IMG/VR virus record: IMGVR_UViG_3300009103_000001
Coordinates: 62,001 to 126,000 of that record
DNA: 64,000 nt
Strand: one strand, 5' to 3'
Shown here in pieces: positions 3,027 through 51,842 of the stretch. The translations under genes were made by a program, and so were the position numbers. Position 1 is the stretch's first letter. The number at the start of each line of letters is the position of its first letter. The notes beneath the pieces are model-generated. The model saw only the letters and a list, made by a program, of their open reading frames with translations, was not told the origin of the DNA and ran no database searches.

Positions 3027-3191
3027 ATGAAGACAATAGGTAAACATACCATAAAAGAGTTACAACCACATATTAAAGAAATTAGTGAACAATTTAATTT
3101 AAAACCATATAATGTTAAAGATTTTAAATTAATAAGAAAATTATTAGTACAACGGTATTATTCAATACCAATAATGGAGACTTATAATTAA
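3027..3191 (+). CDS. Small hypothetical protein (54 aa)
   Basis: MKTIGKHTIKELQPHIKEISEQFNLKPY...; its stop overlaps the SET gene start (TAATG), suggesting translational coupling. Confidence 0.6.
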   Translation: MKTIGKHTIKELQPHIKEISEQFNLKPYNVKDFKLIRKLLVQRYYSIPIMETYN

Positions 3192-3595
3192 TGAAACTTA
3201 TAAAACACAATGGTTTAAGAGTTAGTAAATCAAATGTACATGGTTTTGGTGTTTTCACTGATGTAGAGATAAAAAGTGGTGATTTGGTGGAACAATGTCC
3301 AACACACATATTATATGACACAAAAGTAGACTTAATACACCCTTCATTAAAAAGTTATGTGTATCAATTTACAATAGATGATAAACTAACACCAATAGTG
3401 CTTTTAGGGTGGGGTGGTATATATAACCATAGTGATGACCATAATTTAAATTATAAAGGAGAATATTTAATAGTCCAAGACGAAAATAAATTGGTTTTTA
3501 GTTTTTGGGCTAATAGAGATATTGAGGCCGGAGAAGAGTTATTTATTAATTATGGTAAAGAATATTTTAAGTATTTTAATATTAATAAAATTTAA
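3191..3595 (+). CDS. SET-domain protein (putative lysine methyltransferase)
   Basis: SET motifs HGFGVF, IYNHS and RDIEAGEELFINYG. Confidence 0.85.
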   Translation: MKLIKHNGLRVSKSNVHGFGVFTDVEIKSGDLVEQCPTHILYDTKVDLIHPSLKSYVYQFTIDDKLTPIVLLGWGGIYNHSDDHNLNYKGEYLIVQDENKLVFSFWANRDIEAGEELFINYGKEYFKYFNINKI

Positions 3596-3726
3596 AAGCT
3601 TATTTGCTTTTAGCTAGCTTGCTTTTGCTGCTGCAGCGCTTAAATATATATAATATAATAAAAAGCATAATAAATATATTTTTTTTTAATCCTACCTTAT
3701 ATGAATCCCAAATATTTATAATAAGA

Positions 3727-4728
3727 ATGAGAAATATTATAAAAAAAATATTAAAAGAAAGTTCAGATTTTGATTGGGTTAGGGATATTGAAGTTGAGAC
3801 TGATTTAACACCGTCACAAATTGTTCATAGATATGATTCTTTACCAAGTGAGATTGTTGGCCCAATGATTAGTAATGGTTTTTTTGATGTATACTATGAA
3901 GACGCTGCCGGAAAATATATTTTAAAAACTGATAGTTGGTGTGACTTTATACCATTATTTAAAAATATTGATAGTCGTTATGGGTATATGGGTAGAGGTT
4001 TAGCTGAAAGAATATTTTGTGATGATGAGGATTATTGGGAACCATATGATTCACATGATTTAGTTTATGATTGGATAAACCAAGTTTGGGATTTTGTTAC
4101 GCGAGATAAAACTTTATACAAATATATAGTAGAATGGATTAATGATAATCTTATTGGTGATGAAATGCATTTTGAGAGAAAAGAAACAACTTTAACAAAA
4201 GAAGATGTTCTTGATTGGTCTGCTGATTCTGATGTTTTGGGTGAAATGATTGATGAATTAGATGTTTTTGAAGATTTAAAACTTGAATTAACTTGGGCCT
4301 ATGGTTCAGCATATAATGTTGCGGCTAGAGATGGAATATATAACTCAGCTGTTGGAGCTGTAATGGATTTCTTTGGTAAAGGTGAGTGGGTACCCAAAGA
4401 AAAGACAGCGAAGTATACATTAAATTTTGACATCACAGATTTAATACAAGATGTTTTAGTGGAGGGAATAGAAAATTGTTGGGACCAATGTAGTAAATAT
4501 TGGAACCCAAAAAACAGAGATTTGGGGGACCAAACAGAAGAAGAAGCTTTTGAAGAGTGGTGTGAAGAATGTTGGGATTTCCCTTTTAGTGAGTTCGGTA
4601 ATTTTATTGATTTTTTTGAATTTTACTTGGATGATAGGGATGAATTATTAACTCCAAGGTTTGATGAATACCCAGATGATAGTAAGATATATCCTTATTT
4701 TGTAGAAGATGTGTATGATAGAATATGA
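3727..4728 (+). CDS. Leader-bearing acidic protein (MRNIIKKILKESSDFDW)
   Basis: Start moved from TTG 3604 to ATG 3727, which follows ATATTTAT at 3712 and begins the shared leader. Confidence 0.8.
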   Translation: MRNIIKKILKESSDFDWVRDIEVETDLTPSQIVHRYDSLPSEIVGPMISNGFFDVYYEDAAGKYILKTDSWCDFIPLFKNIDSRYGYMGRGLAERIFCDDEDYWEPYDSHDLVYDWINQVWDFVTRDKTLYKYIVEWINDNLIGDEMHFERKETTLTKEDVLDWSADSDVLGEMIDELDVFEDLKLELTWAYGSAYNVAARDGIYNSAVGAVMDFFGKGEWVPKEKTAKYTLNFDITDLIQDVLVEGIENCWDQCSKYWNPKNRDLGDQTEEEAFEEWCEECWDFPFSEFGNFIDFFEFYLDDRDELLTPRFDEYPDDSKIYPYFVEDVYDRI

Positions 4729-6785
4729 GTAAAACTAAAATAAATAATAATGATTTTGAATGGGCCAAAGACATCCCATTAATTATGGATACTTGTGAAG
4801 CGTATGGTATATTAAAACCAGGTGATGAAATTATTATTGATGCGATAGATAATTGGGAGGATAACCCAAATCAATGGAATGATACTGATGAGATACAAAC
4901 CTTTTATAGTGTTAAAGCAAAGGTATTAGCTTTAGATGAGTGTAACAATATACATAGAAATAATGAAAGTAATGCTAATACAATTCTAGTATCAATAGAA
5001 GAGGATGGTTATTATGGGTTTGATGATTTATGGGTTGAAGATTTTGTTGGGACATTACCATCACAGTGTCAAAAAGATAATTGTATGTTTTTAATTTGTG
5101 ACACAAATGAGGAAGAATACCAAATAAAATTAATTGAACCATCGTTAAATGAGTCTGATGATTTTAAATGGGTTGATGGGATACCTAAAGATTATTACCC
5201 ACCAGACTTAGAGTCTGGACTTAAAGGTTTAGAAAAATGGGTGGGACAAGCTTATCAAATAGATGATGAGATAGGCCTTTCTGTTCAGGATGTAAAAGAA
5301 AATCCGAACAAAGAGAATATTCAAGATTTAATAAATGTTCTTAAACATTGGAAACCATATCATGATGGTGATGAAGTTTATTGGGCCGTGGAAGACCTTA
5401 TTTCTTCAATAAACCCATTTAGGTTTCAAGACTTAAATAATATGGGATTATTTGAATCTGATTTGGATTGGGTTAATAATACATCAAATAAGATACAGAA
5501 CACTGGTATTGGTCACGATGGACATATAATTTCTTTACAAGAAGTTTATTTCGATTTTTTAAGAACAATAGCTAAGGTTGAGGGTAATTATAACCCACGA
5601 CTTGAATCACACGCTACATTAGACACCAAATATACTAGAAAAGTAAGGGATTATTTAAATTTGAACAGTAGAGACTATCAAGGATTAGCACGTGAATTAC
5701 TTCGTATAGGTTTGGATGAAGCTTTTAAAATGTATTTTGATAATAAGCCACAATTAAGTGAATCTGATGAATTAAATTGGGTTAAGAGCACTGGTTTAGG
5801 TAAAGTAGATTTAAGAGATTGTAAACCTGGTGATATTTTAATCACTAGAAGTGGTAAAACTGTTGAGTATGTTGGCCCAACGGAAAAAGGTAATTATTAC
5901 GACCACGTAGTAAAATATAATGATGGCCATAGTTATGGTAGTAGGACACACGATGGTTATGTGTTTAGGAAAAATAGGCGAGATGATGATGAAGATATCA
6001 TTCATGTGTTAAAAGAATATAAAAAAACAATAACTGAGGCAGCAGGGATTTCATTTGAAGTGAGAAAATGGGGTGAAATTATCTATAATGAGATAATGAA
6101 TAACCCTGATGAGAAAAAAAGGTTAATCATTGATGGTTATGACCACCCTGAAGCGTTCAACGGATTCCCAATAGACTATGTTGTGATAGATTTTTACGAT
6201 AAATTAACGGGATATGGTCAAGAACATTCAGGATATGATAAAGATGGTAACTATGTTGTATTATTATACATACAACCGCAACTAATAAATAATGAATATA
6301 GAGGATATGATTTAAAATCGGCATTAAATCATGAAATGAAACATGCTTGGGAGGACTATCAAAGAGTATCAAAAGGTTATACTAATATTGAACAAACTAA
6401 AGAATCACAAGAGTTATATAATAAAGATTTCATACATTTAATGAGTGATGAAAATATTAAAGGGCCCATTAAAACAGTGTTAAAATATTTTTATTATTTA
6501 ACCAATTTAGAAAAAGGTCCTTATATGGAGAATGTTTATGATAGAAATCCGGCGTATGAAAATATGATTAGAAAAATTATATCTAAAGATTTTGAACAGT
6601 TTAAAGACCGTTTTGATTTAGATGTTAATTGGCATTTAGTAAATACAGCTTATGATATACCATTTGTAAAAAAATTTAAAACTCCATTAGATTTTATTGA
6701 CTATAGTTCTTCAGAACTTAAAAAAAGAGCAATTAAAGTTTTAAAAAAAATTAATAAAATGAAATACATACATGGAATGTTGTAA
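4725..6785 (+). CDS. Putative multi-module polyprotein with C-terminal HExxH metallopeptidase-like domain
   Basis: Internal linkers LNESDDFKW, LFESDLDW, LSESDELNW and ITE; HEMKH at ~6330. Confidence 0.8.
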   Translation: MSKTKINNNDFEWAKDIPLIMDTCEAYGILKPGDEIIIDAIDNWEDNPNQWNDTDEIQTFYSVKAKVLALDECNNIHRNNESNANTILVSIEEDGYYGFDDLWVEDFVGTLPSQCQKDNCMFLICDTNEEEYQIKLIEPSLNESDDFKWVDGIPKDYYPPDLESGLKGLEKWVGQAYQIDDEIGLSVQDVKENPNKENIQDLINVLKHWKPYHDGDEVYWAVEDLISSINPFRFQDLNNMGLFESDLDWVNNTSNKIQNTGIGHDGHIISLQEVYFDFLRTIAKVEGNYNPRLESHATLDTKYTRKVRDYLNLNSRDYQGLARELLRIGLDEAFKMYFDNKPQLSESDELNWVKSTGLGKVDLRDCKPGDILITRSGKTVEYVGPTEKGNYYDHVVKYNDGHSYGSRTHDGYVFRKNRRDDDEDIIHVLKEYKKTITEAAGISFEVRKWGEIIYNEIMNNPDEKKRLIIDGYDHPEAFNGFPIDYVVIDFYDKLTGYGQEHSGYDKDGNYVVLLYIQPQLINNEYRGYDLKSALNHEMKHAWEDYQRVSKGYTNIEQTKESQELYNKDFIHLMSDENIKGPIKTVLKYFYYLTNLEKGPYMENVYDRNPAYENMIRKIISKDFEQFKDRFDLDVNWHLVNTAYDIPFVKKFKTPLDFIDYSSSELKKRAIKVLKKINKMKYIHGML

Positions 6786-6815: not shown

Positions 6816-7373
6816 ATGAAAAAAATACTTACAACAATATTAATTTTAATTAGTCTATTATCTATAGGACAAGATAAAGAGTTATTTGAATATGTGAATC
6901 AATACCGAATAGGTAATAATTTAAAACCATTAGAGTGGTCTGATAAATTAGTTAAAATATCTATAGGACAAAATAATAAGAATATTAAAGATAAATCTTT
7001 ATCACATAGTGTACATAATTCTTATGAAAATTGTTTATTAGGTTATACTATAGCCCCAACCAAAACTGAACATAAAGATTTCATTAAATTTGTTAAAAAA
7101 TATTTTAATTACAAATATAATGTAGACAAAGATATGTCAAATGAAGAATTAAATAGTTTAACTAGGATGTACATGATTTATATTTGGCATAATTCACCAA
7201 AACATAAGGAAAATATGTTAAAAAAAGATGTTAAACATTGTTCATCTGAAAGTTATATTGGTGATTTCGAAATTTTTAATGGTAAATTAAATGTTAATGG
7301 TAAAAGTTATACATATAAACAATTATCTACACACTATAAAGTAGAGTATTACGCCACAATGAATTTACAATGA
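6816..7373 (+). CDS. CAP (SCP-like) domain protein with signal peptide
   Basis: N-terminal signal peptide; VNQYR...LKPLEWSDKL, LSHS, EN and WHNSPKHKENML motifs. Confidence 0.8.
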   Translation: MKKILTTILILISLLSIGQDKELFEYVNQYRIGNNLKPLEWSDKLVKISIGQNNKNIKDKSLSHSVHNSYENCLLGYTIAPTKTEHKDFIKFVKKYFNYKYNVDKDMSNEELNSLTRMYMIYIWHNSPKHKENMLKKDVKHCSSESYIGDFEIFNGKLNVNGKSYTYKQLSTHYKVEYYATMNLQ

Positions 7374-8390
7374 TGGTTCAAAAAAACAAGGTAGTTCCTT
7401 ACCCTTAACTTTCACTTTTTTACATTTAGGTTTTTTATGTGTTTTTTTAGTGAAAATACTTTTTCTATATTTATTATATTTTTTAGGTTTAAATGTTTGT
7501 TTTAGTTTAACCATTTCAACCTCATAGTTATACAACATAGAACCAGCTTCCATTTTTGTCTCAGCTGTAACTTCTAATAAAACACTTATTTTAACATACC
7601 TATATTCTTTAGTTTGTTCACGAGCCTCACTTTTTTCATTTCTCGACATATTTGGTCCATATATATTTGGCCCTTGGTTTGGTTTTGTAATCACATCAAC
7701 ATCATCTACATCAAAACTATCAACAATATTAACAACACTTTCAGCTCTAAGTTTAGCTAGTTCTTCATTACCCATACTTATAGGTTCTTTATCTGTAGAA
7801 GATTCAATAACAACTTTAGTTATTTCACCTTCTTCACTAAGTACATTGAAAATATCATTAATTTTACTTTTTGCGTATTCAGATAACTCATACCCACCCG
7901 TTTCAAAAATATTGTCAGTATCTAATTCAATAGAGTCCTCTAATACTATAATTGAATTTTTAGGTAAAAGTGTATCTTTAGTAACTTTTATGTCAGAAAC
8001 AGTGAAACCTTGTCTTTGTTTAGAAATTATACTATGGTCACTTTTAGTTTTATATGTTTCTATTTTTGCGTTTTCAAAATCTTTTTTACTAACAGATTTT
8101 AATTTTTCTAAATTTTCCCTATTCAACTCAATTTGAGCATCACTAAATAACTGATATAAATCCTCATCACCAGATTCTAATTTATTTTGTATTAACTCAG
8201 CCGCTTTTATATGTGACGAATCTATTGGTTGGGTTTGTGCTTTTATATCGGTCATTGAAGCTAAAGCTATTAATCCGGCTAAAGCCCATTCTTTAAACTC
8301 TTCCTCTAATATTTCTTCTTTTAATATTTCGTCACTTCTGTAGTTTATTACAGATTTAAGTTGACTCTCTTTTAGAATAATTCTTTTCAT
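7365..8390 (-). CDS. Leader-bearing OmpA-like (peptidoglycan-binding) domain protein
   Basis: MKRIILKESQLK leader; FETGGYEL, ESSTDKEP, NEELAKLRAESV and RYVKI resemble the OmpA C-terminal domain; ATATTTAT upstream on the minus strand (8396-8403). Confidence 0.7.
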   Translation of the reverse strand: MKRIILKESQLKSVINYRSDEILKEEILEEEFKEWALAGLIALASMTDIKAQTQPIDSSHIKAAELIQNKLESGDEDLYQLFSDAQIELNRENLEKLKSVSKKDFENAKIETYKTKSDHSIISKQRQGFTVSDIKVTKDTLLPKNSIIVLEDSIELDTDNIFETGGYELSEYAKSKINDIFNVLSEEGEITKVVIESSTDKEPISMGNEELAKLRAESVVNIVDSFDVDDVDVITKPNQGPNIYGPNMSRNEKSEAREQTKEYRYVKISVLLEVTAETKMEAGSMLYNYEVEMVKLKQTFKPKKYNKYRKSIFTKKTHKKPKCKKVKVKGKELPCFFEPSL

Positions 8391-22118: not shown

Positions 22119-22511
22119 ATGGGACAAAACTTTTTTATACGTAAAAATTCAGAATTACCAATATTAAAAATGAAAGTTATTAATGATGGTAGAAGTGATT
22201 ATAAAAAGATTTTTGATAATCTAGAGAATGCTGCAGTGACATTTTCAATGGTCGATTCTGAAACAGGTAAACCAAAAGTATTTAATAAACAAGCTTTTAT
22301 AATACCAGTAATAAAAGATATATGTAAAGAAGATGAAGAATACTATATTGGGTATAAATTTAGTGAAAGAGAAGTTAATAGAGTGGGAACATATAAAGCT
22401 GAATTTAAAATAGATTTTTTAGATGATGGGTGTTCATTAATTGTACCAATAAGAGAAGATTTATTTGTTAATGTAACAGATAGTTTCACTAACTCAAAAA
22501 TAGTTTGTTAA
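22119..22511 (+). CDS. Putative virion structural protein (BppU-like/Ig-like)
   Basis: FFIRKNSELPIL...AAVTFSM...GTYKAEFKIDF pattern; structural gene context. Confidence 0.6.
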   Translation: MGQNFFIRKNSELPILKMKVINDGRSDYKKIFDNLENAAVTFSMVDSETGKPKVFNKQAFIIPVIKDICKEDEEYYIGYKFSEREVNRVGTYKAEFKIDFLDDGCSLIVPIREDLFVNVTDSFTNSKIVC

Positions 22512-23050
22512 TGGAAAAATTAATTAAAAAAATATTAAAAGAAGAATTATTAAAAGAAAACTTAAGGTTTGATGATATCTATAGTGAGTTATGGGATAAG
22601 ATGTTATATAGTGTTTGTATGAAGTACACTAATGATATTAATGTAGCACAGGATTATTGTCAAAATGGTTTTATGAAAGTATATAATAATCTTCATACAT
22701 ATAAAAATACTGGTTCTTTAGAAGGTTGGGTTAGAAGAATTATTAATAACTCAATGATAGATGATTTTAGAAAAAAGAAAAATCAACCAACTGCACAAAC
22801 AATAGATGAACCGGATTGGGGACGTATAGATTCAGGGTATGATGATGAAGAATACAGTGAAGATGATAGGATGCACTATGTTAAACAAGCTATAACAAAT
22901 CTAAGCCCATCAAACAGAGAAGCTTTTGAATTATACTTGGATGGTTATAAACATGAAGAAATCGCTGATATGTTGGGCATTAGTGTTGTGGCCTCTAAAT
23001 CAAGGGTTTTTAAAGCTAAAAGAGAAATTAGGAAATTAATTAATCTCTAA
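22511..23050 (+). CDS. ECF-type sigma-70 factor carrying the shared leader (MEKLIKKILKEELLKE)
   Basis: Region 2 AQDYCQNGFMKVY...GSLEGWVRRIINNSMIDDFRK; region 4 LSPSNREAFEL...HEEIADMLGIS...SKSRVFKAK. Confidence 0.9.
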   Translation: MEKLIKKILKEELLKENLRFDDIYSELWDKMLYSVCMKYTNDINVAQDYCQNGFMKVYNNLHTYKNTGSLEGWVRRIINNSMIDDFRKKKNQPTAQTIDEPDWGRIDSGYDDEEYSEDDRMHYVKQAITNLSPSNREAFELYLDGYKHEEIADMLGISVVASKSRVFKAKREIRKLINL

Positions 23051-26510: not shown

Positions 26511-26812
26511 TGGCAGTAATAGAAAAAACAGAAAGAGATGATGGTGTTATAGAATGTTTAATAGATTCTTCTAACATACTTAAATCTGAGTATAAAGAAT
26601 CTAATAACACATTAATATTAACATTTAAGGCTGGAACTAGATATGAATATAAAGGTATTTTAAATAGAGATTATGTCAGGTTTGAAATGACAGAAAGCCA
26701 AGGTAGTGTTTTCAATAAGACAATGAGGAAGTATGAATATGAGAAATTAGAAAGTACTGACGCTTCATTAATTAAAGAACGTATAGAAGAAATTAAAAAA
26801 GAAAGAAATTAA
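26510..26812 (+). CDS. KTSC-domain protein
   Basis: DSSNILKSEY...LILTFKAGTRYEY...ESQGSVFNK. Confidence 0.85.
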   Translation: MAVIEKTERDDGVIECLIDSSNILKSEYKESNNTLILTFKAGTRYEYKGILNRDYVRFEMTESQGSVFNKTMRKYEYEKLESTDASLIKERIEEIKKERN

Positions 26813-27138
26813 TTTTTACTATAAGAAACAACATCATAAATACTAAGACAAGGTTGTTCACCTTCAAATTCACTTTTAGCTTTAAACACAAAAACAGGAC
26901 CTTCTGTATGTACAATATAAGTTAAGTCATTATTATCACTATAACCTAAGAATTTTATAGTGACATTTTCAAAACCAAAAGATTTTAATTTTTTAATAAC
27001 TAAAGATTTTATAGATTCACCAGTACATTGTATTTCAGATAATATATCAGCAATTTCTACCGCAGTAATTTCATTCATACGATTTTCTAGTAGTTTTTTA
27101 AACTGACCTTCCTTTAATATTATAGTTTTATTTTTCAT
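26809..27138 (-). CDS. Leader-bearing protein (MKNKTIILKEGQFKKLLE)
   Basis: Late motif on the minus strand at 27161-27170; start moved to ATG 27138. Confidence 0.75.
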   Translation of the reverse strand: MKNKTIILKEGQFKKLLENRMNEITAVEIADILSEIQCTGESIKSLVIKKLKSFGFENVTIKFLGYSDNNDLTYIVHTEGPVFVFKAKSEFEGEQPCLSIYDVVSYSKN

Positions 27139-27173: not shown

Positions 27174-27764
27174 TTAGTTTTCATAATCTTCGTCATATTC
27201 CCTAGGGTCAAAACCAGATTGTCTTTTTTCGTATTCCTCAGTGTCTAATTCAGCTTCATACGCTCTACCATCCTCAAAACCTTTATTATATATTTTTTCT
27301 AATTTATTTTCTACTTCTTTTTCTTCACAATCCTCATACCCTTTTTCATGGCCAGCGTCATAACCTTCTTCATACCCAATATCCTTAGCTTCATCAATTT
27401 CATCCTCACAATCATATCTTGCATCTCGGCCCCCATCATGAAAACCCTCATTATAACCTTGTTGTTCACCCTCTTCCCAACCTTCTTGTTGTCCTTTTTG
27501 TCTACCATTGTCATAAATCTCTTCAGAAAAATTATATAAAACATTAGTCATTTCATCTAGTTTATCAACATCTAAACCTAAATTATAAATAAAGTCTACA
27601 AGTTTATATGTGCGGTTTTCTGGGTCATGAATATAATAATCCCAATCCTGTAAATCACTTAAGTCATTAGCAATATCAGTTTTAGAGGCCGGTTCAATAT
27701 CTCCAACCCAATCAAAATCATTATCTTCCTTTAATATTTTCTTAATTAAATCTTTCATTATCAT
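27174..27764 (-). CDS. Leader-bearing acidic protein (KDLIKKILKEDNDFDW) with GxxxG repeats
   Basis: GRQKGQQEGWEEGEQQGYNEGFHDG and GYEEGYDAGHEKGYED repeats, FliH/Yae1-like pattern. Confidence 0.8.
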   Translation of the reverse strand: MIMKDLIKKILKEDNDFDWVGDIEPASKTDIANDLSDLQDWDYYIHDPENRTYKLVDFIYNLGLDVDKLDEMTNVLYNFSEEIYDNGRQKGQQEGWEEGEQQGYNEGFHDGGRDARYDCEDEIDEAKDIGYEEGYDAGHEKGYEDCEEKEVENKLEKIYNKGFEDGRAYEAELDTEEYEKRQSGFDPREYDEDYEN

Positions 27765-33565: not shown

Positions 33566-33594
33566 TGCCTAAAGATATTTATAGATAAAACTCT

Positions 33595-35624: not shown

Positions 35625-35697
35625 TTATTTTTAATGTTCACATTAAATAAAGATAAGTTATTGTTATTAGTGTAGATATTTATATTAAAATATTTTT

Positions 35698-42289: not shown

Positions 42290-43018
42290 ATGAAAATATT
42301 AAAACCAGGAGATGAGGGATATGGTTATATCATTGAGTATGATGCCGGATTTATTTCACCATCATTAACATGTAAAGACGGTGTGTGTTCTAATTCTAAT
42401 TTGATTAAAGAATTTAAATCTGGTTTAAATTTCGGATTAGATGGGGAGTTACCAGATAAAATAGAATTATACGCTGTTCTTCAAAAATGGGGTGTGGAGA
42501 ATAAAAATGGTAGAGTATATACAGAAGAAATTTTAAAAAGAGAGGCAAAAAGATACCAAGAATTTATAGATATGGGTACATCACTCGGTGAATTGAATCA
42601 CCCAGAATCATCAATTATTGATGCTGACCGTGTATCACATAGAGTTACAGAAATATGGTGGGAAGGTAGAACATTAATGGGCAAAATCGAATTAGACACA
42701 ACACCAGGTTATTTAAGTGGTGGTGTGATTAGTTCTGTTGGTGATAAAGTTCTTAATATGATTAGAAAGGGATGGACTGTTGGCATATCTTCTAGAGGTG
42801 TCGGTTCGTTAAAACAAGAAGGTGGTAAAAATGTTGTTCAAGACGATTTCGAATTAATATGTTGGGATATTGTAACATCACCATCTACACCAGGTTCTTG
42901 GATATCGATAAGTCAACAAGATTTGACACCATATACAGAATCAGTTAAAAAAAATAATAATTTATTATCCGAAGAAGAACATACATTATTGAATAATTTA
43001 AATAAATTTTTATTATGA
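42290..43018 (+). CDS. Prohead core protein protease (T4 gp21-like)
   Basis: NKNGRVY, LGELNHP, VSH, GISSRGVGS and DIVTSPSTPGS; start moved to ATG 42290 after CATATTTATT at 42264. Confidence 0.92.
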   Translation: MKILKPGDEGYGYIIEYDAGFISPSLTCKDGVCSNSNLIKEFKSGLNFGLDGELPDKIELYAVLQKWGVENKNGRVYTEEILKREAKRYQEFIDMGTSLGELNHPESSIIDADRVSHRVTEIWWEGRTLMGKIELDTTPGYLSGGVISSVGDKVLNMIRKGWTVGISSRGVGSLKQEGGKNVVQDDFELICWDIVTSPSTPGSWISISQQDLTPYTESVKKNNNLLSEEEHTLLNNLNKFLL

Positions 43019-43296
43019 AAAAAATAATTAAATTAAACGAAAACGATATAGGGAACTTGGTTAAGAAAATAATCAAGGAAGATAGAACTGATTTTGAAAA
43101 AGTTTATATAATAGTTAATAGAGAAATACACGGTTATGAGGCGGTAGAGAATGTATATAAGACGTTGGAAGATGCGGTAAAAGATGATGTATTTGACAGA
43201 TACGAACAAACGCCAGAAATACTAAACGACCCAAATGATGGGGGGTTATATGGTATGAGTGAAACATTTTATATATTACCTTATAAAGTAAATTAA
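43015..43296 (+). CDS. Leader-A cargo protein (MKKIIKLNENDIGNLVKKIIKE)
   Basis: Leader shared with six other ORFs. Confidence 0.8.
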   Translation: MKKIIKLNENDIGNLVKKIIKEDRTDFEKVYIIVNREIHGYEAVENVYKTLEDAVKDDVFDRYEQTPEILNDPNDGGLYGMSETFYILPYKVN

Positions 43297-43313
43297 AAAT
43301 AATTTTTATTATA

Positions 43314-43634
43314 ATGAAAAGAATTGAAAAACAAAAGAGACGGTTAATTGAAGAAGCTAATAAAAGGGTTCTAAAGGAATCCGCTGAATTGACTGAATTA
43401 CACGATGATGTATTATACTTAACACCTGAATACCGTTTGACTGGTAATAGGGGTGAGGGTGTTCGTGTTTATGAAGAAATAATGGATACTGTTAATTCAT
43501 ATGGTATAGAACCATCTGATGAGGCTAAAGCTTTAATTAAAAGACTTGAATACGACCTTAGTGCTTTAGAGGGTTTCGATGAAAGAGTGGTAAAATTATA
43601 TGAATCTTTAAGTGGAATAAATATTAATGAATAA
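43314..43634 (+). CDS. Leader-C cargo protein (MKRIEKQKRRLIEEANKRVLKE)
   Basis: Leader related to those of 54431 and 54613. Confidence 0.8.
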   Translation: MKRIEKQKRRLIEEANKRVLKESAELTELHDDVLYLTPEYRLTGNRGEGVRVYEEIMDTVNSYGIEPSDEAKALIKRLEYDLSALEGFDERVVKLYESLSGININE

Positions 43635-43641
43635 AATAATT

Positions 43642-43980
43642 ATGAAAAAAATAATTAAATTAAACGAAAACGATATAGAAAATTTGGTTAAGAAAATAAT
43701 CAAGGAAGAGGGTGAAGAGTATAGAAGTAAAGACCCAGACCAATTGGATATGTTTGATGGCACAGTTAAAGATAGGGAATTAGAACAAGAATATAAAGAA
43801 TGGGAAGAAGAGGATGATAAAATGACAGATATATATAATGATATTTATGACACACTTGAACCGGTATTGAATAATATTCTTGATAAGTATGGAGAAGATT
43901 TTGATTTAATCGCCAATGATGACATGATTCAAAACATAGTAGAGGATTGGATGTATCCAGATGGAGGTGATGAAGATTAA
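43642..43980 (+). CDS. Leader-A acidic cargo protein
   Basis: Start moved to ATG 43642 at the leader. Confidence 0.8.
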   Translation: MKKIIKLNENDIENLVKKIIKEEGEEYRSKDPDQLDMFDGTVKDRELEQEYKEWEEEDDKMTDIYNDIYDTLEPVLNNILDKYGEDFDLIANDDMIQNIVEDWMYPDGGDED

Positions 43981-44010
43981 AAGGATAATAATATTTATAA
44001 TAAAATAATC

Positions 44011-45156
44011 ATGAAAAAAATAATTAAATTAAACGAAAACGATATAGAGAATTTAGTTAAAAAAATAATCAAGGAAGATAGGTTACAAGAATTAGATAAA
44101 TTAACTTATGATAGTGCAGCTGAAAAAGCTTCAGAAAGAGGTATACCCGCTTTATCTGATAGATTTAGAAAACATGGACAAGAACATGGTCTAGGAAAGG
44201 AAAAAGAACAATTCACTTTAGTGATTGACCATAGCAGTCTTGGAGAAAGGGAATATACTTATAAAGTTGAGTCTGTGGAGGAAATGGAAGATGGTAAAAC
44301 TTTAAAAATAAAATTAGTTGACATAGATAACCCACAAAATGTTCATACATATACAGGAAGTATTCGACTCACCAACCCAAACAAAAACAGTAGGTCACTT
44401 AAACGTGGGGATTATAAACTAATTTTATATTTTAGAGATAATTATTATACTTTAGCTAAAACAAGAAAAGATGCTAAAAATTTATTAAATATGTTAATTA
44501 AAAATATGGGTGGTAAACACATGTTCCACCCACTAAAAAATATAGACCCTAGAACTTTAACTCTTGGGTATTCAAATTTTGGTGAAAATATTAAAAGAAG
44601 AAAAACACTTAGTGAAGATAGAACTGATTATGAGATGAGTGGTGCTAGAAGTCGTAAAGACTATGTCTCTAATCCAAGAGAAAGAGATATTACTGGAATG
44701 TTCGGTAAATATTCTGAAGATGTACCACCAATGGTAATTAGATACATGAGAAAAAATCCTGAAGCTATTGTAAAAAGATTATATAAAATATATGGTGATA
44801 AAATATATGATTATATACCACAACAAGTAGATATGGATTTAGTTAGAAATAACCCGAATGATGCCGATTTAGGGGCACAAGTTAGAAGTCGTTTTAATTC
44901 TGAAAATATTAATGAATGTGGTGAAGGGGGTTATATGACAGAAGATGGTTGTGTTGATTATGTCGAGGAAAATAGAAGACCTAGAAGAATATCTGAATCA
45001 AACGGTAAAGGTTGTGCTGATACAGAAAAAGGTTGTATTAGAAAAAGAAAAAGTGGTTGGGTAATATTAAATAATAAAAAAGGTGGTGTTTGGAGAAAAT
45101 GTTCTAGTAGAAAAAACTGTGAAGAACAATTAGATGCATATCACGCAAATCAATAA
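44011..45156 (+). CDS. Leader-A multi-module protein
   Basis: ATATTTAT at 43991; internal LQE, LSE, INE and ISE sites separate modules. Confidence 0.85.
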   Translation: MKKIIKLNENDIENLVKKIIKEDRLQELDKLTYDSAAEKASERGIPALSDRFRKHGQEHGLGKEKEQFTLVIDHSSLGEREYTYKVESVEEMEDGKTLKIKLVDIDNPQNVHTYTGSIRLTNPNKNSRSLKRGDYKLILYFRDNYYTLAKTRKDAKNLLNMLIKNMGGKHMFHPLKNIDPRTLTLGYSNFGENIKRRKTLSEDRTDYEMSGARSRKDYVSNPRERDITGMFGKYSEDVPPMVIRYMRKNPEAIVKRLYKIYGDKIYDYIPQQVDMDLVRNNPNDADLGAQVRSRFNSENINECGEGGYMTEDGCVDYVEENRRPRRISESNGKGCADTEKGCIRKRKSGWVILNNKKGGVWRKCSSRKNCEEQLDAYHANQ

Positions 45157-45158
45157 TC

Positions 45159-45464
45159 ATGAAAGTTAAAAATATGTTATACGCGGGTCTTGGTATGGGT
45201 ACAATGGTATCTAAGAAGACTTATGAAGCTTATGAAAATTTTGTAAAAAGTGGTAAGGAGTTGGACCCAACAGTAAGTTCTACTATTGATGATTTTTTTA
45301 GTGATTTGGAAAATCAAAAAAAAGAAGTTAGAAATAGAGTTGAGGAAATTTTTAGTTTAACAGCGGATAAATTAGGGTACATCAAATTAAATGAGTATGA
45401 AAATTTATTAAAAAGAATAAAAACTTTAGAAGCTGAGTTAGCACAAGAAAAAAATAAAAAATGA
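45159..45464 (+). CDS. Phasin-like coiled-coil protein
   Basis: LYAGLGMG...FVKSGK...LLKRIKTLE resembles PhaF/PhaI-like phasin family proteins. Confidence 0.55.
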   Translation: MKVKNMLYAGLGMGTMVSKKTYEAYENFVKSGKELDPTVSSTIDDFFSDLENQKKEVRNRVEEIFSLTADKLGYIKLNEYENLLKRIKTLEAELAQEKNKK

Positions 45465-45805
45465 AAAAAAGAATTGTAAAACTAAACGAAAACGATATTG
45501 AAAGACTCGTTAATAGAATTATAAAAGAAGATGAAAAAGTATCATCTTCACAACTTAAACAAAAAATGAAACAAACTAGTATGGATACTGGTAGTTTAGG
45601 TTTAACACCAAAAGAAAGAGAAGTCTTTAGTACAGCAATAGATATGTTAAAAGATTTTTTCGCACAACAAGGAAATCAGGCAACAGGTAAAGCTTTAAGT
45701 TTATTTAATAGATTTAAGGATAGTTTAAAAGATGTTAAAGCTGAACCAATTAAATCACCAGAAGAGGAACAAAATACTGGTACAGATGAATTCGCGGACC
45801 AATAA
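45461..45805 (+). CDS. Leader-A cargo protein (MKKRIVKLNENDIERLVNRIIKE)
   Basis: Shared leader. Confidence 0.8.
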   Translation: MKKRIVKLNENDIERLVNRIIKEDEKVSSSQLKQKMKQTSMDTGSLGLTPKEREVFSTAIDMLKDFFAQQGNQATGKALSLFNRFKDSLKDVKAEPIKSPEEEQNTGTDEFADQ

Positions 45806-46296
45806 TGGGATTAATTCGTAAAATAATAAAAGAAGAACTTCTTAAGGAAGTTGGGGGATATGATGACCCAACTATAATGGCTCAACATTCTGGTGCAACA
45901 TTACGTTCACTAATAGAAGTATTGTCTGGTATGTTAGAGGCTATTAAAAGATTAGCTCAAAAAATATCAAAAGGCGGGTTAGATAAATTTAAAGGTAGAG
46001 ACGTATTATTTAATTTATCTGACATAATAAATGAAGGATTAAGATTAACAGGTTTATTAATAAAAGATTTCACAGAAGATGATATTATATTTGAAGGTAA
46101 AAAGTTTATTGAAAAAATGAATGAGTTTAAAAGAAAGATTAGACTTTTATCTAATCTTGGTTCAAGTTATACAGAAAAAGACTATAATGAGAAAATATTA
46201 GAATTGATATTTAAATTGGAACCGACAATAAACAGTTATGGTAATAGTTTAAATGATGTTAATAAAAGATTCATGGATAGGTTCGATATGATATAA
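45805..46296 (+). CDS. Leader-B cargo protein (MGLIRKIIKEELLKE), helical
   Basis: Leader nearly the same as that of the sigma factor at 22511. Confidence 0.8.
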   Translation: MGLIRKIIKEELLKEVGGYDDPTIMAQHSGATLRSLIEVLSGMLEAIKRLAQKISKGGLDKFKGRDVLFNLSDIINEGLRLTGLLIKDFTEDDIIFEGKKFIEKMNEFKRKIRLLSNLGSSYTEKDYNEKILELIFKLEPTINSYGNSLNDVNKRFMDRFDMI

Positions 46297-49972: not shown

Positions 49973-50140
49973 ATGCCGTATAAAGTAAAAGGTAAATGTG
50001 TTTATAATGCCAATACTGATGAGAAAGTAGGTTGTACTAAGGGTTCAGTCAAAAAATATCTTGCCGCATTAAATGCTAATGTGGATGAAAATATTATTAA
50101 AAAAGTTGTACAGGAAACCTTTAAAAGGGTTGGCATTTAA
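49973..50140 (+). CDS. Small basic Cys-containing late protein (55 aa)
   Basis: MPYKVKGKCVYNANTDEKVGCTKGSVKKYLAALNANVDENIIKKVVQETFKRVGI*; TATTTATA at 49952; missed by the ORF track. Confidence 0.7.
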   Translation: MPYKVKGKCVYNANTDEKVGCTKGSVKKYLAALNANVDENIIKKVVQETFKRVGI

Positions 50141-50368: not shown

Positions 50369-50803
50369 ATGAAAATTAAAAAAATCATAAAAACTATTTT
50401 GGAATCAGAATTTGACTGGGTTAAAGATTCTGTTTTACATTTTTGGGATATGAATAAAAAATATGTTGTGGATGTTTCAAAGTTAGAAAGATACCCACCA
50501 ATGAGTCTTTCACCAACTTCTGATAGGTATACAGATATATTTATATCAGATATTATAGATTATGGTAAAGAAATAGGGTATGATATAACGGATTTAGGTA
50601 GTACAGCTGATATACAACAACGAGTGCAAGGTTCTTATACCGTTCCTCATGATGTATGTTATATATATTTTAATCCAAACAAATTTGTAGAGTGGGATAT
50701 GTGTGGTATAGACGACCCAACTTGGGATGGTGAATATGAGTTAATGGATGCGGAGAGTTTTATTTATTATATGGAGAATAATTTTATTAAGAATGAACAT
50801 TAA
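50369..50803 (+). CDS. Leader-B cargo protein (MKIKKIIKTILESEFDW)
   Basis: GATATTTATA at 50347. Confidence 0.8.
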   Translation: MKIKKIIKTILESEFDWVKDSVLHFWDMNKKYVVDVSKLERYPPMSLSPTSDRYTDIFISDIIDYGKEIGYDITDLGSTADIQQRVQGSYTVPHDVCYIYFNPNKFVEWDMCGIDDPTWDGEYELMDAESFIYYMENNFIKNEH

Positions 50804-51842
50804 AAAAATTATAAGAGAAGAGTTGGACGATTTTGATTGGGCTAGGGATGATATCTACTTTTCAATAGACTATATTCTAGGTAAACAGATGTATTTTAGG
50901 CATAGTAATATAAATGAACTTGAAAGAGAATATAAAGCTTATAACAATGACAGAATACAACAAATACCAAAAAATAAAATAGTCTTAGGTAATATTAAGT
51001 GGACTAGTATGTTTACGGCAAATTATGTTAAAAATAATATAGCACACATCTATTTACAAGACAGCACTAGTTTACAATATTCAGTGGATATGGTTGAATT
51101 TTATGTAAATAGTGGTATATGGGCTTTAGAGGATGATAATGGTAATATTATTAATGATTTCTCTGGCCAATATTTAAAAGAATCAGAGTTGGATTGGATT
51201 CAAAAATCTGAACCAGATAGAAAAGATATTAGAAGTTTCAATAAAGAAAGGTATAAAACCACTCTTAATTATAATAATGCTGAAATAGGGGATAAATTTA
51301 TCCCACCTGGTAGTCATATGGTATGGACCGTTGATGATAAAGAATTTTGGCGTGGCAAATGGGGTAATGACGAAAATGGAGACCCTGAATATTATAGATA
51401 TTTTATTATATGGATAAAAAATGAGAGGGGTGACCTCAAAAGAAAGTATTATAATAAAACGAATAAATTATTTCCAGGTACTTATAGACCTTGGAGAAAA
51501 ATAGTTGACTCTAATATTAATGAATCGAAAGAGTTTGATTGGGCAAAAGAAATTAAACCTGAAATGACTGCTGAAGCTGTACCACTATATTATAATAAAC
51601 CTCTTTTTTGGTATCATCGGGGTGAACCTAGGCAATGTTGGGGGATGCCTACCATTTATTGGTTATCAAAAAGTTATGTCACTGAAAGGGGTGAAAATAT
51701 ATCTTTATTATGTTATGATGACGGATGTGATGTAGAATCAAAAATTGAATGTAGTGCATTTTATGACTATACAATTGCTAATATGTTTAATGAGGGGACA
51801 CTTAGATTTCAATCACAGTTAAGTGATATTGAACCAACTTAA
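50793..51842 (+). CDS. Putative three-module polyprotein (MNIKKIIREELDDFDW; LKESELDW; INESKEFDW)
   Basis: Start moved to ATG 50793; internal linkers at 51174 and 51516. Confidence 0.8.
   Translation: MNIKKIIREELDDFDWARDDIYFSIDYILGKQMYFRHSNINELEREYKAYNNDRIQQIPKNKIVLGNIKWTSMFTANYVKNNIAHIYLQDSTSLQYSVDMVEFYVNSGIWALEDDNGNIINDFSGQYLKESELDWIQKSEPDRKDIRSFNKERYKTTLNYNNAEIGDKFIPPGSHMVWTVDDKEFWRGKWGNDENGDPEYYRYFIIWIKNERGDLKRKYYNKTNKLFPGTYRPWRKIVDSNINESKEFDWAKEIKPEMTAEAVPLYYNKPLFWYHRGEPRQCWGMPTIYWLSKSYVTERGENISLLCYDDGCDVESKIECSAFYDYTIANMFNEGTLRFQSQLSDIEPT

What the first reader, a model, noticed from the sequence alone, without database searches (positions are those of the whole stretch)
4725..6785. Apparent polyprotein: ~100-aa modules joined by L-x-E-S-D-x(2-3)-W linkers, ending in an HExxH peptidase
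Seen: the protein starts NDFEWAKD, then has LNESDDFKWV (5145), LFESDLDWV (5448), LSESDELNWV (5754) and ITEAAG (6030). This gives segments of roughly 140, 100, 100, 90 and 250 aa with no similarity to each other; the last carries HEMKH. The linker matches the junction at the start of single-cargo genes (ILKESSDFDWV, ILKEDNDFDWV, ILESEFDWV). Inference: one gene encodes about five proteins released by the head protease, a virus-polyprotein strategy rarely described in tailed phages.
Basis: partly seen in the sequence, partly recalled or inferred. Interest (0 to 1): 0.88.

Follow-up and report, generated by a model that had tools for sequence, protein, structure and literature searches.

The report
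Phage head-cargo polyprotein with cleavable linkers
An uncultured, probably marine T4-like giant phage strings five unrelated small proteins into one gene, joined by a conserved peptide that looks like a cutting site for the phage's head protease, which suggests a beads-on-a-string way of loading many proteins into the virus particle.

Summary
ORF 4725-6785 (686 aa) has three [LIVM]-x-E-S-(acidic)-[FL]-x-W-[IV] linkers and an ITE/AAG junction. They split it into five modules of 143, 101, 102, 92 and 248 aa. AlphaFold gives five confident, different folds, and confidence collapses exactly at the linkers.

Eighty-two homologues carry 1-7 such linkers, about 30 unrelated module families in permuted orders, and usually the same HExxH C-terminal module. 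Modules also occur as separate genes behind a roughly 10-aa Lys/Ile-rich leader ending in hydrophobic-x-Glu, and four such genes lie in this window. The same leader heads prohead-core-like proteins next to a T4 gp21-type (S77) protease gene. T4 gp21 cuts after L/I-x-E.

The best reading is a multi-cargo precursor of internal head proteins, cut by the prohead protease (confidence about 0.6; no cleavage was shown). Self-processing by the HExxH module is unlikely as the general mechanism, because 18 of 22 multi-linker ORFs lack that module.

The idea is anticipated by T4 capsid-targeting sequences and by "polyvalent proteins". The conserved linker, its D-F-D-W part downstream of the cut, and the cassette shuffling appear undescribed. 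I rate it a new variant of a known kind. All module functions are unknown.

The parts
3712..3719 (+). Promoter-like or initiation motif ATATTTAT, 8 nt upstream of the 3727 start codon. It heads the two-gene unit 3727-4728 / 4725-6785.
   Evidence: 22 of 44 copies in the window lie 4-23 nt upstream of start codons in gene orientation, against 0.57 expected. The same motif precedes the terminase, portal, protease and gp13-like genes.
3727..4728 (+). Single-cargo gene (333 aa, net charge -47). Its leader is MRNIIKKILKE, followed by the junction SSDFDWVRDIE. Its stop codon overlaps the target's start codon (ATGA).
4725..6785 (+). Target gene: 686-aa precursor made of five modules.
4725..5153 (+). 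Module 1 (aa 1-143, beta-rich, pI 4.05). It starts with a degenerate junction, MSKTK-INNN-DFEWAKDIP, that has no Glu. This aligns to an internal linker (ISES-NDFDWVKEIP) of homologue P0002.
5145..5174 (+). Linker 1, LNE|SDDFKWV. Predicted cut after Glu143.
   Evidence: pLDDT below 50 at residues 139-153.
5154..5456 (+). Module 2 (aa 144-244, all-helical). It exists as a stand-alone gene product (P0096, P0153). It is absent exactly from linker to linker in P0002 and P0004.
5448..5474 (+). Linker 2, LFE|SDLDWV. Predicted cut after Glu244.
   Evidence: pLDDT below 50 at residues 234-258.
5457..5762 (+). Module 3 (aa 245-346, mainly helical).
5754..5783 (+). Linker 3, LSE|SDELNWV. Predicted cut after Glu346.
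   Evidence: pLDDT below 50 at residues 341-358.
5763..6038 (+). Module 4 (aa 347-438). It is a small five-stranded beta domain. The domain is widespread as a stand-alone protein of 70-130 aa, for example P0162 (73 aa) and P0112, which has its own leader MNIKKIIRE|SIDEFDWI.
6030..6047 (+). Junction ITE|AAG. Predicted cut after Glu438. It lacks the D-F-D-W part.
   Evidence: stand-alone HExxH homologues carry leaders ending in hydrophobic-x-Glu at this exact column. pLDDT dips to 58 at residues 431-440.
6039..6782 (+). Module 5 (aa 439-686). It is a conserved alpha/beta domain with HEMKH (nt 6330-6344) and an invariant Glu596. Candidate zincin-like metallopeptidase.
27174..27764 (-). Single-cargo gene (196 aa, net charge -39). 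Its leader is MIMKDLIKKILKE, followed by the junction DNDFDWVGDIEP.
   Evidence: upstream ATATTTAT motif.
42290..43018 (+). Prohead protease of the T4 gp21 type (Peptidase_S77). It is the proposed processing enzyme.
   Evidence: (Pfam, E = 5e-25), and (aligns to T4 gp21 structure 5jbl at E = 2.9e-16; GELNHPE and SSRGVGS present).
43015..46296 (+). Run of prohead-core-like genes between the protease and scaffold genes. Four begin with MKK(I/R)I(K/V)KLNENDIE.LV..IIKE, and 45805 begins with MGLIRKIIKE.
49973..50140 (+). 55-aa Lys-rich ORF with two Cys, directly after the major capsid gene. It is homologous to the 43-aa N-terminal leader (MPYFTKKG...KYLAALH) that heads about half of the homologous polyproteins.
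50369..50803 (+). Single-cargo gene (144 aa). Its leader is MKIKKIIKTILE, followed by SEFDWV. It is a full-length homologue (30-36% identity) of the internal module family placed just before the constant C-terminal part in other phages' polyproteins.
50793..51842 (+). Second polyprotein (349 aa, three modules, no HExxH module). It has the leader junction IRE|ELDDFDWA (nt 50811-50843) and linkers LKE|SELDWI (nt 51174-51200) and INE|SKEFDWA (nt 51516-51545).

Best explanation
The gene encodes a multi-cargo precursor of internal head proteins in an uncultured 210-kb T4-like phage.

Shown:
- The protein is five independently folding, mutually unrelated modules joined by flexible peptides.
- The peptide consensus across the family is [IL]-N-E-S-(D/E/N)-D-[FL]-D-W-[IV]-(K/R)-D-[IV]-x-P.
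- The same junction follows a roughly 10-aa Lys/Ile-rich N-terminal leader in single-module genes.
- That leader, without D-F-D-W, also heads prohead-core-like proteins encoded beside the protease, scaffold and capsid genes.
- Modules are exchanged, inserted, deleted and split off as separate genes exactly at the linkers.

Inferred:
- The precursor is built into the prohead core in the way T4 internal proteins are.
- The gp21-type serine protease (42290-43018) cuts after the invariant Glu of each hydrophobic-x-Glu site, at Glu143, 244, 346 and 438.
- This releases four products of about 10-17 kDa and one of 30 kDa. Three would begin with Ser-Asp...Trp.
- The products stay in the head and probably enter the host cell with the DNA.
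- One gene thereby delivers equimolar amounts of several small proteins, and new cargo can be added by cassette insertion at a linker.
- The C-terminal product is a candidate zinc metallopeptidase whose substrate is unknown.

Speculative: the strongly conserved part downstream of the cut (S-x-D-F-D-W-[IV]-x-D) goes beyond what T4 gp21 is known to need. It may be a clade-specific recognition, docking or retention signal that stays on each mature product.
For: 1. Motif statistics: 10 copies against 0.02 expected in the window. Hydrophobic-x-Glu precedes 258 of 262 D-F-x-W contexts, against a 15% background.
2. Flexible linkers and independent domains: pLDDT is below 50 only at the N-terminus and the three linkers, pTM is 0.49, and the domains are confident.
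3. Modularity: 83 family members have 1-7 linkers. There are about 30 module families with two or more members, plus singletons, in permuted orders. The families compared by hhalign are unrelated except where one holds an unsplit pair or a fragment of another and for one truly related pair. Stand-alone homologues exist for modules 2, 4 and 5, and modules 1-2 occur elsewhere. P0002 lacks module 2 exactly from linker to linker.
4. Leader junction and internal linker are equivalent: gene 50369 carries a leader and is the homologue of an internal module in 30 other polyproteins. Stand-alone HExxH proteins have hydrophobic-x-Glu leaders exactly at the ITE|AAG column.
5. Link to the head: the ...KKIIKE leader heads four to five small genes between the protease and scaffold genes. 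Two cargo genes and the homologue of the MPY leader lie directly after the capsid gene. All three cargo transcription units carry the ATATTTAT upstream motif shared with the terminase, portal, protease and neck genes.
6. Protease: Peptidase_S77 at E = 5e-25. It aligns to T4 gp21 with a His and a Ser at the conserved GELNH and SSRG motifs (their catalytic role is from my own knowledge of gp21). T4 gp21 cuts after L/I-X-E, and T4 internal proteins carry 10-19-aa propeptides that target them to the core (PMC9026906).
7. Clade co-distribution: head-gene loci whose protease is at least 64% identical hold 38 junction motifs in 693 kb. Loci at about 50% identity hold 1 in 514 kb.
8. Module sizes are mostly 100-140 aa, in the size range of the T4 internal proteins (8-20 kDa).
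Against: - No proteomic or biochemical data exist for this clade. The deposited phage genomes searched hold no relative.
- The target itself has no canonical leader and no Glu before its first D-F-E-W (MSKTKINNNDFEW), so how it would be targeted is unclear.
- T4 gp21 is reported to need only L/I-X-E. The extra conservation of Asn at P2, Ser at P1' and D-F-D-W is therefore unexplained and could mean a different recognising partner.
- The modules are acidic (pI 4.05-6.9), unlike the basic T4 internal proteins.
- The gene lies about 29 kb from the head-gene block, and no module has a recognisable function.
- Co-distribution with the protease clade cannot be separated from co-distribution with the phage clade as a whole.
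Confidence: 0.6

Rival explanations
1. The protein is not cut internally. It is an intact multi-domain 'polyvalent' protein. The conserved linkers would then be flexible connectors that each carry a short binding motif (acidic residues plus Phe/Trp), used for example to dock repeatedly on a scaffold, capsid or host partner. Only the N-terminal leaders, where present, would be removed.
For: - Some polyvalent proteins, such as the N4 virion RNA polymerase, ArdC and TraC1, are delivered unprocessed (PMC5512222).
- The motif is far more conserved downstream of the putative cut than a gp21-type site is reported to need.
- It persists at the very N-terminus of the target and of P0004 and P0034 without a preceding Glu.
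- The linkers are predicted to be disordered, as short linear binding motifs usually are.
Against: - Hydrophobic-x-Glu immediately upstream is nearly invariant (258 of 262). A pure binding motif lying downstream of it gives no reason for that.
- The internal linker is interchangeable with the junction behind 10-aa leaders. Such leaders are hard to explain unless they are removed.
- Frequent fission into separate genes shows that the modules do not need to be covalently joined.
Confidence: 0.17
2. The polyprotein processes itself, as virus polyproteins do. The C-terminal HExxH metallopeptidase would recognise N-E-S-D-D-F-D-W and cut the linkers in cis or in trans, either before packaging or after injection.
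For: - The HExxH module is the one constant part of the 83-member family recovered with the target.
- It has HExxH plus an invariant downstream Glu, and a helix / three-strand / helix core as described for zincin-like peptidases (PMC5512222).
- Iyer et al. proposed exactly this role for such domains in polyvalent proteins.
- A dedicated enzyme would explain the extended, highly specific motif.
Against: - 18 of 22 distinct multi-linker ORFs in the fetched loci lack the HExxH module, including the window's own 50793-51842 and a 1355-aa ORF with six linkers. P0082 has seven linkers and no HExxH.
- The HExxH family extends as stand-alone proteins to sequences only 26-46% identical to the target's module. 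The one such distant locus examined (5.9 kb) shows no D-F-D-W.
- The module's own N-terminal boundary is a plain hydrophobic-x-Glu site without D-F-D-W.
- The peptidase assignment itself is weak.
Confidence: 0.12
3. The linker is conserved mainly as a recombination device. In this view a shared DNA or peptide boundary lets cassettes be swapped between genes and phages, and it has no role of its own in processing.
For: - Breakpoints of module insertion, deletion, permutation and gene fission fall in the linkers.
- From my own knowledge, conserved leader-coding sequence at the variable internal-protein loci of T-even phages has been proposed to mediate such exchange.
Against: - Conservation is at the peptide level, not the DNA level. 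The window's copies share only about 70% identity over about 27 nt. Ser is encoded by TCT, TCA, TCG and AGT, and Glu by GAA and GAG.
- This explanation does not exclude cleavage. It explains how the architecture evolves, not why hydrophobic-x-Glu and D-F-D-W are kept.
Confidence: 0.05

Closest known systems
T4 internal proteins (IPI, IPII, IPIII, Alt) with capsid-targeting sequences, processed by prohead protease gp21
   Same: - Short N-terminal propeptide ending in hydrophobic-x-Glu.
- A gp21-type S77 protease is encoded in the genome.
- The mature parts are hypervariable, unrelated and small.
- The genes are scattered outside the head-gene block.
- The leader is shared with prohead core proteins.
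   Different: - Several cargos are concatenated in one ORF, with the cleavage-type site repeated internally.
- There is an additional conserved motif downstream of the cut (S-x-D-F-D-W-[IV]-x-D) that T4 lacks.
- The cargos are acidic rather than basic.
- The target itself lacks the leader.
- Nothing has been shown experimentally.
Polyvalent proteins of phages and conjugative elements (Iyer, Burroughs, Anand, de Souza, Aravind 2017, PMC5512222)
   Same: - 2-15 unrelated domains in one phage polypeptide.
- A zincin-like HExxH domain as the recurrent element.
- Proposed packaging in the head, delivery with the DNA and proteolytic release of individual domains.
   Different: - That paper's text never uses the word 'linker'. 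Here a sharply conserved junction delimits every module.
- None of the modules hits a Pfam family, including the families defined for polyvalent proteins.
- Most multi-linker ORFs lack the metallopeptidase. The likely processing enzyme is therefore the prohead protease, not the embedded peptidase.
Multiply cleaved head and ejection proteins of giant phages phiKZ, 201phi2-1 and SPN3US
   Same: - A diverged gp21 homologue cuts many head proteins after Glu in a three-residue motif.
- Some proteins are cut at several sites.
   Different: - In those phages, apart from the protease's own self-cleavage product, the identified cleavages remove N-terminal propeptides. They do not separate a chain of unrelated globular cargos.
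- Their motif is S/A-x-E with no other identifiable requirement.
Phage P1 Dar proteins (DarA, DdrB and others)
   Same: Head-packaged anti-defence proteins. DdrB has a C-terminal HExxH domain and is processed before packaging.
   Different: There is no repeated linker, the head system is different, and no sequence relationship was found.
Polymorphic toxins with conserved demarcating motifs (for example VENN in CdiA and the Rhs core-end motif; from my own knowledge)
   Same: A short conserved peptide marks the border between a constant part and exchangeable cassettes and serves as the recombination breakpoint.
   Different: Those have one variable C-terminal domain per protein and are secreted bacterial proteins. 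Here many variable modules lie upstream of a constant C-terminal module, in a phage.
Polyproteins of RNA viruses
   Same: One ORF, several mature products, and conserved junction peptides.
   Different: In RNA viruses the processing protease is usually part of the polyprotein itself. That feature was tested here and is not general.

Membership tests
T4-type internal head protein / capsid-targeting-sequence system | N-terminal propeptide of about 10-19 aa ending in L/I-x-E | tested here: inconclusive
   Met for the neighbouring and related genes 3727, 27764 (minus strand), 50369 and 50793, and for many homologues such as MGKLIKKILRE|S. Not met for the target's own N-terminus, MSKTKINNNDFEW, which has no Glu. 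Its four internal junctions do fit hydrophobic-x-Glu.
T4-type internal head protein / capsid-targeting-sequence system | The genome encodes a gp21-type (Peptidase S77) prohead protease with its catalytic His and Ser | tested here: met
   Pfam PF03420 at E = 5.4e-25. phmmer match to T4 gp21 structure 5jbl at E = 2.9e-16, with GELNHPE and SSRGVGS present.
T4-type internal head protein / capsid-targeting-sequence system | The protein is present in proheads and virions and is cleaved there by the protease | not testable with these tools
   The phage is uncultured, and the deposited phage genomes searched hold no relative.
Polyvalent proteins (Iyer et al. 2017) | Two or more unrelated globular domains in one polypeptide of a phage or conjugative element | tested here: met
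   Five separately folding modules with different secondary-structure classes. Module families are unrelated by hhalign. The phage context is shown.
Polyvalent proteins (Iyer et al. 2017) | Domains belong to the described effector, peptidase or LPD families | tested here: not met
   No Pfam or PHROG family for the target, for its separate modules, or for nine diverse homologues (about 55 modules), apart from one sub-threshold DUF7215 match.
Zincin-like (gluzincin) metallopeptidase, for module 5 | HExxH in a helix, plus a third metal ligand (Glu) in a following helix | tested here: met
   H536, E537, H540 and E596 are invariant in 24 diverse homologues. The model places HExxH in helix 99-118 and the Glu in helix 163-174 of the module, after an N-terminal helix and three strands.
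Zincin-like (gluzincin) metallopeptidase, for module 5 | Significant sequence or fold similarity to a known zincin | tested here: inconclusive
   The profile against PDB sequences matches only the catalytic fragment 2l0r_A (a zincin endopeptidase) at E = 0.016. Foldseek with the pLDDT-92.5 model finds nothing below E = 0.3 in the PDB. There is no Pfam hit.
Self-processing viral polyprotein | The protease that cuts the junctions is part of the polyprotein | tested here: not met
   Only 4 of 22 distinct multi-junction ORFs contain the HExxH module. The serine protease is a separate gene about 35 kb away.

The most novel reading that the evidence does not exclude
A clade of AT-rich T4-like giant phages, found at least in ocean metagenomes, may have evolved a general, transferable cargo-loading grammar. 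It would consist of a short leader or a small Lys-rich domain for entry into the prohead core, a protease site, and a new downstream tag (S-x-D-F-D-W-[IV]-x-D-[IV]-x-P) that remains on every mature product and acts as a retention, docking or ejection signal. With it, arbitrary proteins could be strung together as beads on a string, loaded in fixed ratios, cut apart inside the capsid and injected. A sigma factor and strongly acidic proteins that might mimic DNA carry the same leader and could be loaded in the same way. The linkers would double as cassette-exchange points, giving a combinatorial arsenal of dozens of still unknown effector families.
Probability: 0.3. Interest if true: 0.85.

Novelty: new variant of a known kind. 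Interest (0 to 1): 0.7.

Why it matters
If the linkers are cut in the prohead, this would be the clearest case so far of a true cargo polyprotein in a tailed phage. It would have a sharply defined, portable junction peptide.

- **Head assembly:** it would extend the T4 capsid-targeting paradigm from one leader per cargo to one precursor for many cargos. It would also show how a gp21-type protease can acquire extended substrate recognition.
- **Dark matter:** it would give a rule for finding virion-packaged proteins in uncultured phages by scanning for the leader and junction. That rule immediately flags dozens of unknown module families as candidate injected effectors or anti-defence proteins.
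- **Application:** T4 heads are already used to package foreign proteins through the capsid-targeting sequence. A defined cleavable linker for multi-protein loading would therefore be of direct interest.

If the linkers are not cut, the result is still a new, very widespread short linear motif of unknown function in phage proteins.

Tried and rejected
- **Known families:** Pfam and PHROGs on the whole protein, on each module, on the linker segments and on nine homologues gave nothing usable. The only matches were a sub-threshold DUF7215 hit on one linker of P0083 and chance hits.
- **Fold search:** the HExxH module and the full-length model against the PDB, and the full-length model against BFVD, gave no functional lead. 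The one significant hit was an uncharacterised phage protein.
- **Deposited phage genomes:** tblastn of the target, modules 4-5, cargo gene 50369 and core protein 44011 against 50,697 phage genomes found no match. No experimentally studied relative exists in that set.
- **Diverged repeat domain:** I tested whether the modules are copies of one domain that begins with D-F-D-W. This is rejected by hhalign after trimming the linker and by the different predicted folds.
- **Missed leader or frameshift fusion with 3727-4728:** rejected. Stop codons lie directly upstream in frame.
- **T4 late promoter TATAAATA:** not enriched, 28 copies against 24 expected. This search led instead to the ATATTTAT motif.
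- **Asn-mediated self-cleavage at N-E-S:** considered and dropped, because Asn at that position is present in only about half of the linkers.
- **Literature search for the motif letters:** no relevant paper.
- **Degenerate DNA pattern scan of IMG/VR:** the total count (40 stretches) was, by my rough estimate, near what chance would give. It did recover true multi-copy contigs, including a 380-kb contig.

Full report
**What the window is.** The window has 30% G+C and is part of IMG/VR contig IMGVR_UViG_3300009103_000001, 210,157 bp. It carries a T4-type head-gene set:
- large terminase, 33595-35385;
- gp20-like portal, 35698-37575;
- Peptidase_S77 prohead protease, 42290-43018;
- an acidic scaffold-like protein, 46824-48029;
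- Gp23-type major capsid protein, 48065-49888.

The protease aligns to the T4 gp21 crystal structure (5jbl, E = 2.9e-16) and keeps the GELNH and SSRG motifs. From my own knowledge of gp21, these hold the catalytic His and Ser. The closest deposited phages are distant. Flavobacterium phage immuto has 41% capsid and 45% protease identity, and the next are Microcystis phage Mel-JY01 and two metagenomic huge phages. One close homologue of the target protein comes from Tara Oceans metagenomes, so the group is at least partly marine.

**The observation.** ORF 4725-6785 is intact, 686 aa, with stop codons directly upstream in frame. Cutting after each Glu gives pieces of 143, 101, 102, 92 and 248 aa. 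The junction motif occurs 10 times in the six-frame translation of the window, against a mean of 0.02 in 300 shuffles.

It has a leader junction and two internal linkers.

**The family.** A search of 5.8 billion proteins returned 83 proteins including the query, 379-1196 aa long. They share mainly the C-terminal 37-51% of the query at 49-82% identity.
- All but a few carry 1-7 copies of the linker.
- The consensus from 305 distinct contexts is [IL]-N-E-S-(D/E/N)-D-[FL]-D-W-[IV]-(K/R)-D-[IV]-(E/P)-P, and nothing is conserved upstream of P3.
- Anchoring only on D-[FL]-x-W-[IV], 258 of 262 contexts have [LIVM]-x-E within the 10 residues before it, against 15% of background windows. The two halves of the motif are therefore obligatorily coupled.
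- Splitting the proteins at the linkers and clustering gives a constant C-terminal segment, a 45-aa N-terminal leader in 43 proteins, and about 30 further module families with two or more members, plus about 30 singletons. Their orders differ between proteins, for example 2-11-5-3-1-0 against 2-5-11-3-1-0, and ...1-18-23-0 against ...18-1-23-0.
- After trimming the linker, profile-profile comparison finds no relationship between families. The exceptions are families that hold an unsplit pair or a fragment of another, and one truly related pair.
- Homologue P0002 lacks the target's module 2 exactly from linker to linker, leaving a hybrid linker.

**Stand-alone modules.** An exhaustive HMMER search of 1.84 billion cluster representatives found 323 hits.
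- Module 5 (the HExxH module) exists as a separate protein of 245-265 aa.
- Module 4 exists as many separate proteins of 70-130 aa.
- Module 2 exists as proteins of 124-126 aa.
- Module 1 occurs inside differently built proteins.
- Window gene 50369-50803 is a full-length homologue (30-36% identity) of an internal module of 30 of the polyproteins. The modules of 50793-51842 and of 27174-27764 match internal modules elsewhere.

**Structure.**
- With a 46-sequence alignment, AlphaFold2 gives mean pLDDT 80.6 and pTM 0.49. pLDDT is below 50 only at residues 1-17, 139-153, 234-258 and 341-358, that is, at the N-terminal degenerate junction and the three linkers. There is also a dip to 58 at residues 431-440, over ITEAAG.
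- The five modules have different architectures: beta-rich, all-helical, helical, a five-stranded small beta domain, and an alpha/beta domain.
- The whole D-F-x-W part lies in the low-confidence stretch. It behaves as a short linear motif, not as part of a fold.
- Module 5 alone models at pLDDT 92.5.

**The leaders.** Single-module genes start with M-x(1-4)-(I/L)-(I/K)-K-K-I-(I/L)-(K/R)-E followed by the junction. Stand-alone homologues of module 5, down to 26% identity, start with leaders that end in hydrophobic-x-Glu just before (S/V)AGISF. The Glu is at least 90% conserved. This validates ITE|AAG as a boundary of the same kind without D-F-D-W.

In the window, the small genes between the protease and scaffold genes (43015, 43627, 44011, 45461), and also 53360 and 54135, begin with a near-identical 22-aa leader, MKKIIKLNENDIENLVKKIIKE. 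Gene 45805 begins MGLIRKIIKE. These genes lie where, from my own recollection of the T4 gene map, genes 67 and 68 sit. PMC9026906 lists gp67 and gp68 as prohead core proteins. Published work on T4 states that gp21 cuts after L/I-X-E, and that 10-19-residue N-terminal propeptides target internal proteins to the core and are then removed (PMC9026906). The first 60 residues of the capsid protein hold five hydrophobic-x-Glu sites. This stretch precedes the region that aligns with the start of mature gp23.

**Further links to the head.**
- About half of the homologous polyproteins start with a 43-aa Lys-rich domain, MPYFTKKG...KYLAALH-INE|S. In the window its homologue is a separate 55-aa ORF (49973-50140) directly after the capsid gene and before cargo gene 50369.
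- An upstream motif, (G/A)ATATTTAT(A/T), lies 4-23 nt before 21 genes (22 of the 44 motif copies, against 0.57 expected). These include the terminase, portal, protease, gp13-like and core genes and all three cargo transcription units.
- The target's start codon overlaps the stop codon of 3727-4728 (ATGA), so the two are probably co-expressed.

**Which protease?** Of 22 distinct ORFs with two or more junctions in all the loci fetched, only 4 contain the HExxH module. The embedded peptidase therefore cannot be the general cis-acting enzyme. The HExxH family also occurs as a stand-alone gene directly after a leader-plus-D-F-D-W cargo gene (L007). In a distant 5.9-kb locus whose leaders are MKIILTE-type, no D-F-D-W was seen.

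The junction motif is clade-restricted. In head-gene loci from IMG/VR it occurs 38 times in 693 kb where the protease is at least 64% identical to the window's, and once in 514 kb where it is about 50% identical. Short ...IKKLLRE leaders persist in the more distant group, and hydrophobic-x-Glu leaders are visible in Flavobacterium phage immuto. The leader plus hydrophobic-x-Glu is therefore the older, general system, and D-F-D-W is a clade-specific addition. One 380-kb IMG/VR contig has at least 18 junctions, including a 1355-aa ORF with six linkers.

**Most likely mechanism.** The precursor enters the prohead core and the S77 protease cuts after Glu143, 244, 346 and 438. This gives five products that remain in the head and are probably ejected.
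- The architecture, the modularity and the equivalence of leaders and linkers are shown.
- Cleavage, virion location and ejection are inferred by analogy with T4. I put this at about 0.6.
- The function of the D-F-D-W part is unknown. Its retention at the uncleavable N-terminus of the target, P0004 and P0034 suggests that it acts on the mature product, or as a docking signal, rather than only as part of the scissile site.

**Weak points.**
- There are no experimental data for the clade.
- The target lacks a canonical leader.
- The modules are acidic, pI 4.05-6.9. The neighbouring cargos carry net charges of -47 and -39.
- No module has an assignable function.
- The peptidase call for module 5 rests on three things. 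These are HExxH plus invariant Glu596, a secondary-structure order that fits the zincin core described by Iyer et al., and a profile match of E = 0.016 to a zincin catalytic fragment. There is no fold-search support.

**Comparison with what is known.** The closest concepts are the T4 capsid-targeting-sequence and internal-protein system, and the 'polyvalent proteins' of Iyer et al. 2017 (PMC5512222). Those are multi-domain phage proteins with zincin-like domains, predicted to be delivered with the DNA and processed into units. Giant phages of the phiKZ and SPN3US type cut many head proteins after Glu, sometimes at several sites, but the cleavages identified there remove N-terminal propeptides.

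I could not find the following described in the searchable literature:
- a sharply conserved junction peptide repeated between every module;
- identity of that junction with the leader junction of single-cargo genes;
- the conserved part downstream of the cut;
- the cassette shuffling at the linkers.

I therefore rate the finding a new variant of a known kind, not categorically new, with interest 0.7.

Noticed in passing
window-wide; e.g. 297-304, 3712-3719, 33575-33582, 35676-35683, 42265-42272, 50348-50355: The motif (G/A)ATATTTAT(A/T) lies 4-23 nt upstream of 21 start codons in gene orientation (22 of its 44 copies, against 0.57 expected). The genes include the terminase, portal, protease and neck genes and the cargo genes. 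It is probably this phage's promoter, possibly a late one, or a translation-initiation signal. The T4 late promoter TATAAATA is not enriched.
   Followed up: partly
43015-43296, 43627-43980, 44011-45156, 45461-45805, 53360-53764, 54135-54431: Six genes share a near-identical 22-aa N-terminus, MKK(I/R/K)(I/V)(I/V)KLNE.DIE.LV..IIKE, which has two hydrophobic-x-Glu sites. The same leader is very common in related contigs: 105 of 1080 ORFs near head genes have a leader-like N-terminus. It is likely a prohead-core targeting propeptide.
   Followed up: partly
22511-23050 (+): A sigma-70/ECF-type sigma factor (Sigma70_r2 E = 7e-14, r4_2 E = 5e-13) starts with the cargo-type leader MEKLIKKILKE|ELLKE. 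This raises the possibility that a sigma factor is packaged in the virion. A gene with a weak Sigma70_r4_2 hit also lies about 0.7 kb upstream of the polyprotein gene in a Tara Oceans relative (L003).
   Followed up: no
49973-50140 (+): An unannotated 55-aa ORF, Lys-rich with two Cys, lies right after the capsid gene. In other phages the same domain is fused as the N-terminal leader of the polyproteins.
   Followed up: partly
7365-8390 (-) and 26809-27138 (-): An OmpA-domain protein (341 aa) and a 109-aa protein also begin with leader-like N-termini, MKRIILKE|S and MKNKTIILKE|G. The set of candidate head-targeted proteins may therefore be larger than the D-F-D-W class.
   Followed up: no
3727-4728 (+), 27174-27764 (-): The single-cargo proteins are extremely acidic, with net charge -47 in 333 aa and -39 in 196 aa. 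That composition is compatible with DNA-mimic anti-restriction proteins. No homology supports this.
   Followed up: no
5763-6038 (module 4 of the target): This small beta domain has the signature VDLR.C..GD...G(T/S)RTHDG.V(F/Y). It is very widespread as a stand-alone 70-130-aa protein in metagenomes (about 80 of the 150 listed cluster representatives) and has no Pfam family.
   Followed up: partly
48065-49888 (+): The Gp23-type capsid protein is 607 aa. About 250 residues (roughly aa 110-360, several of them Cys) lie between the segments that align to T4 gp23, where T4 has about 120. The insertion domain is therefore enlarged.
   Followed up: no
23729-26206 (-), 39330-40460 (+), 3191-3595 (+), 6816-7373 (+): Auxiliary genes: a ClpA/B-like double AAA+ protein (825 aa, phrog_4871 E = 1e-259), a glutamine-synthetase-like protein, a SET-domain protein, and a CAP-domain protein whose N-terminus is hydrophobic and looks like a signal peptide.
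   Followed up: no
12416-15406 and 16650-19469 (+): Two large proteins (996 and 939 aa) are built from repeats matching phrog_25468, with 11 and 2 stretches. They flank the gp13-like neck gene and are probably structural proteins.
   Followed up: no
P0083, residues 543-559 (homologue, not in the window): The only Pfam signal on any linker is a sub-threshold match to positions 30-46 of DUF7215 (E = 0.0027, 18 bits against a cut-off of 27). That family might contain a related junction.
   Followed up: no
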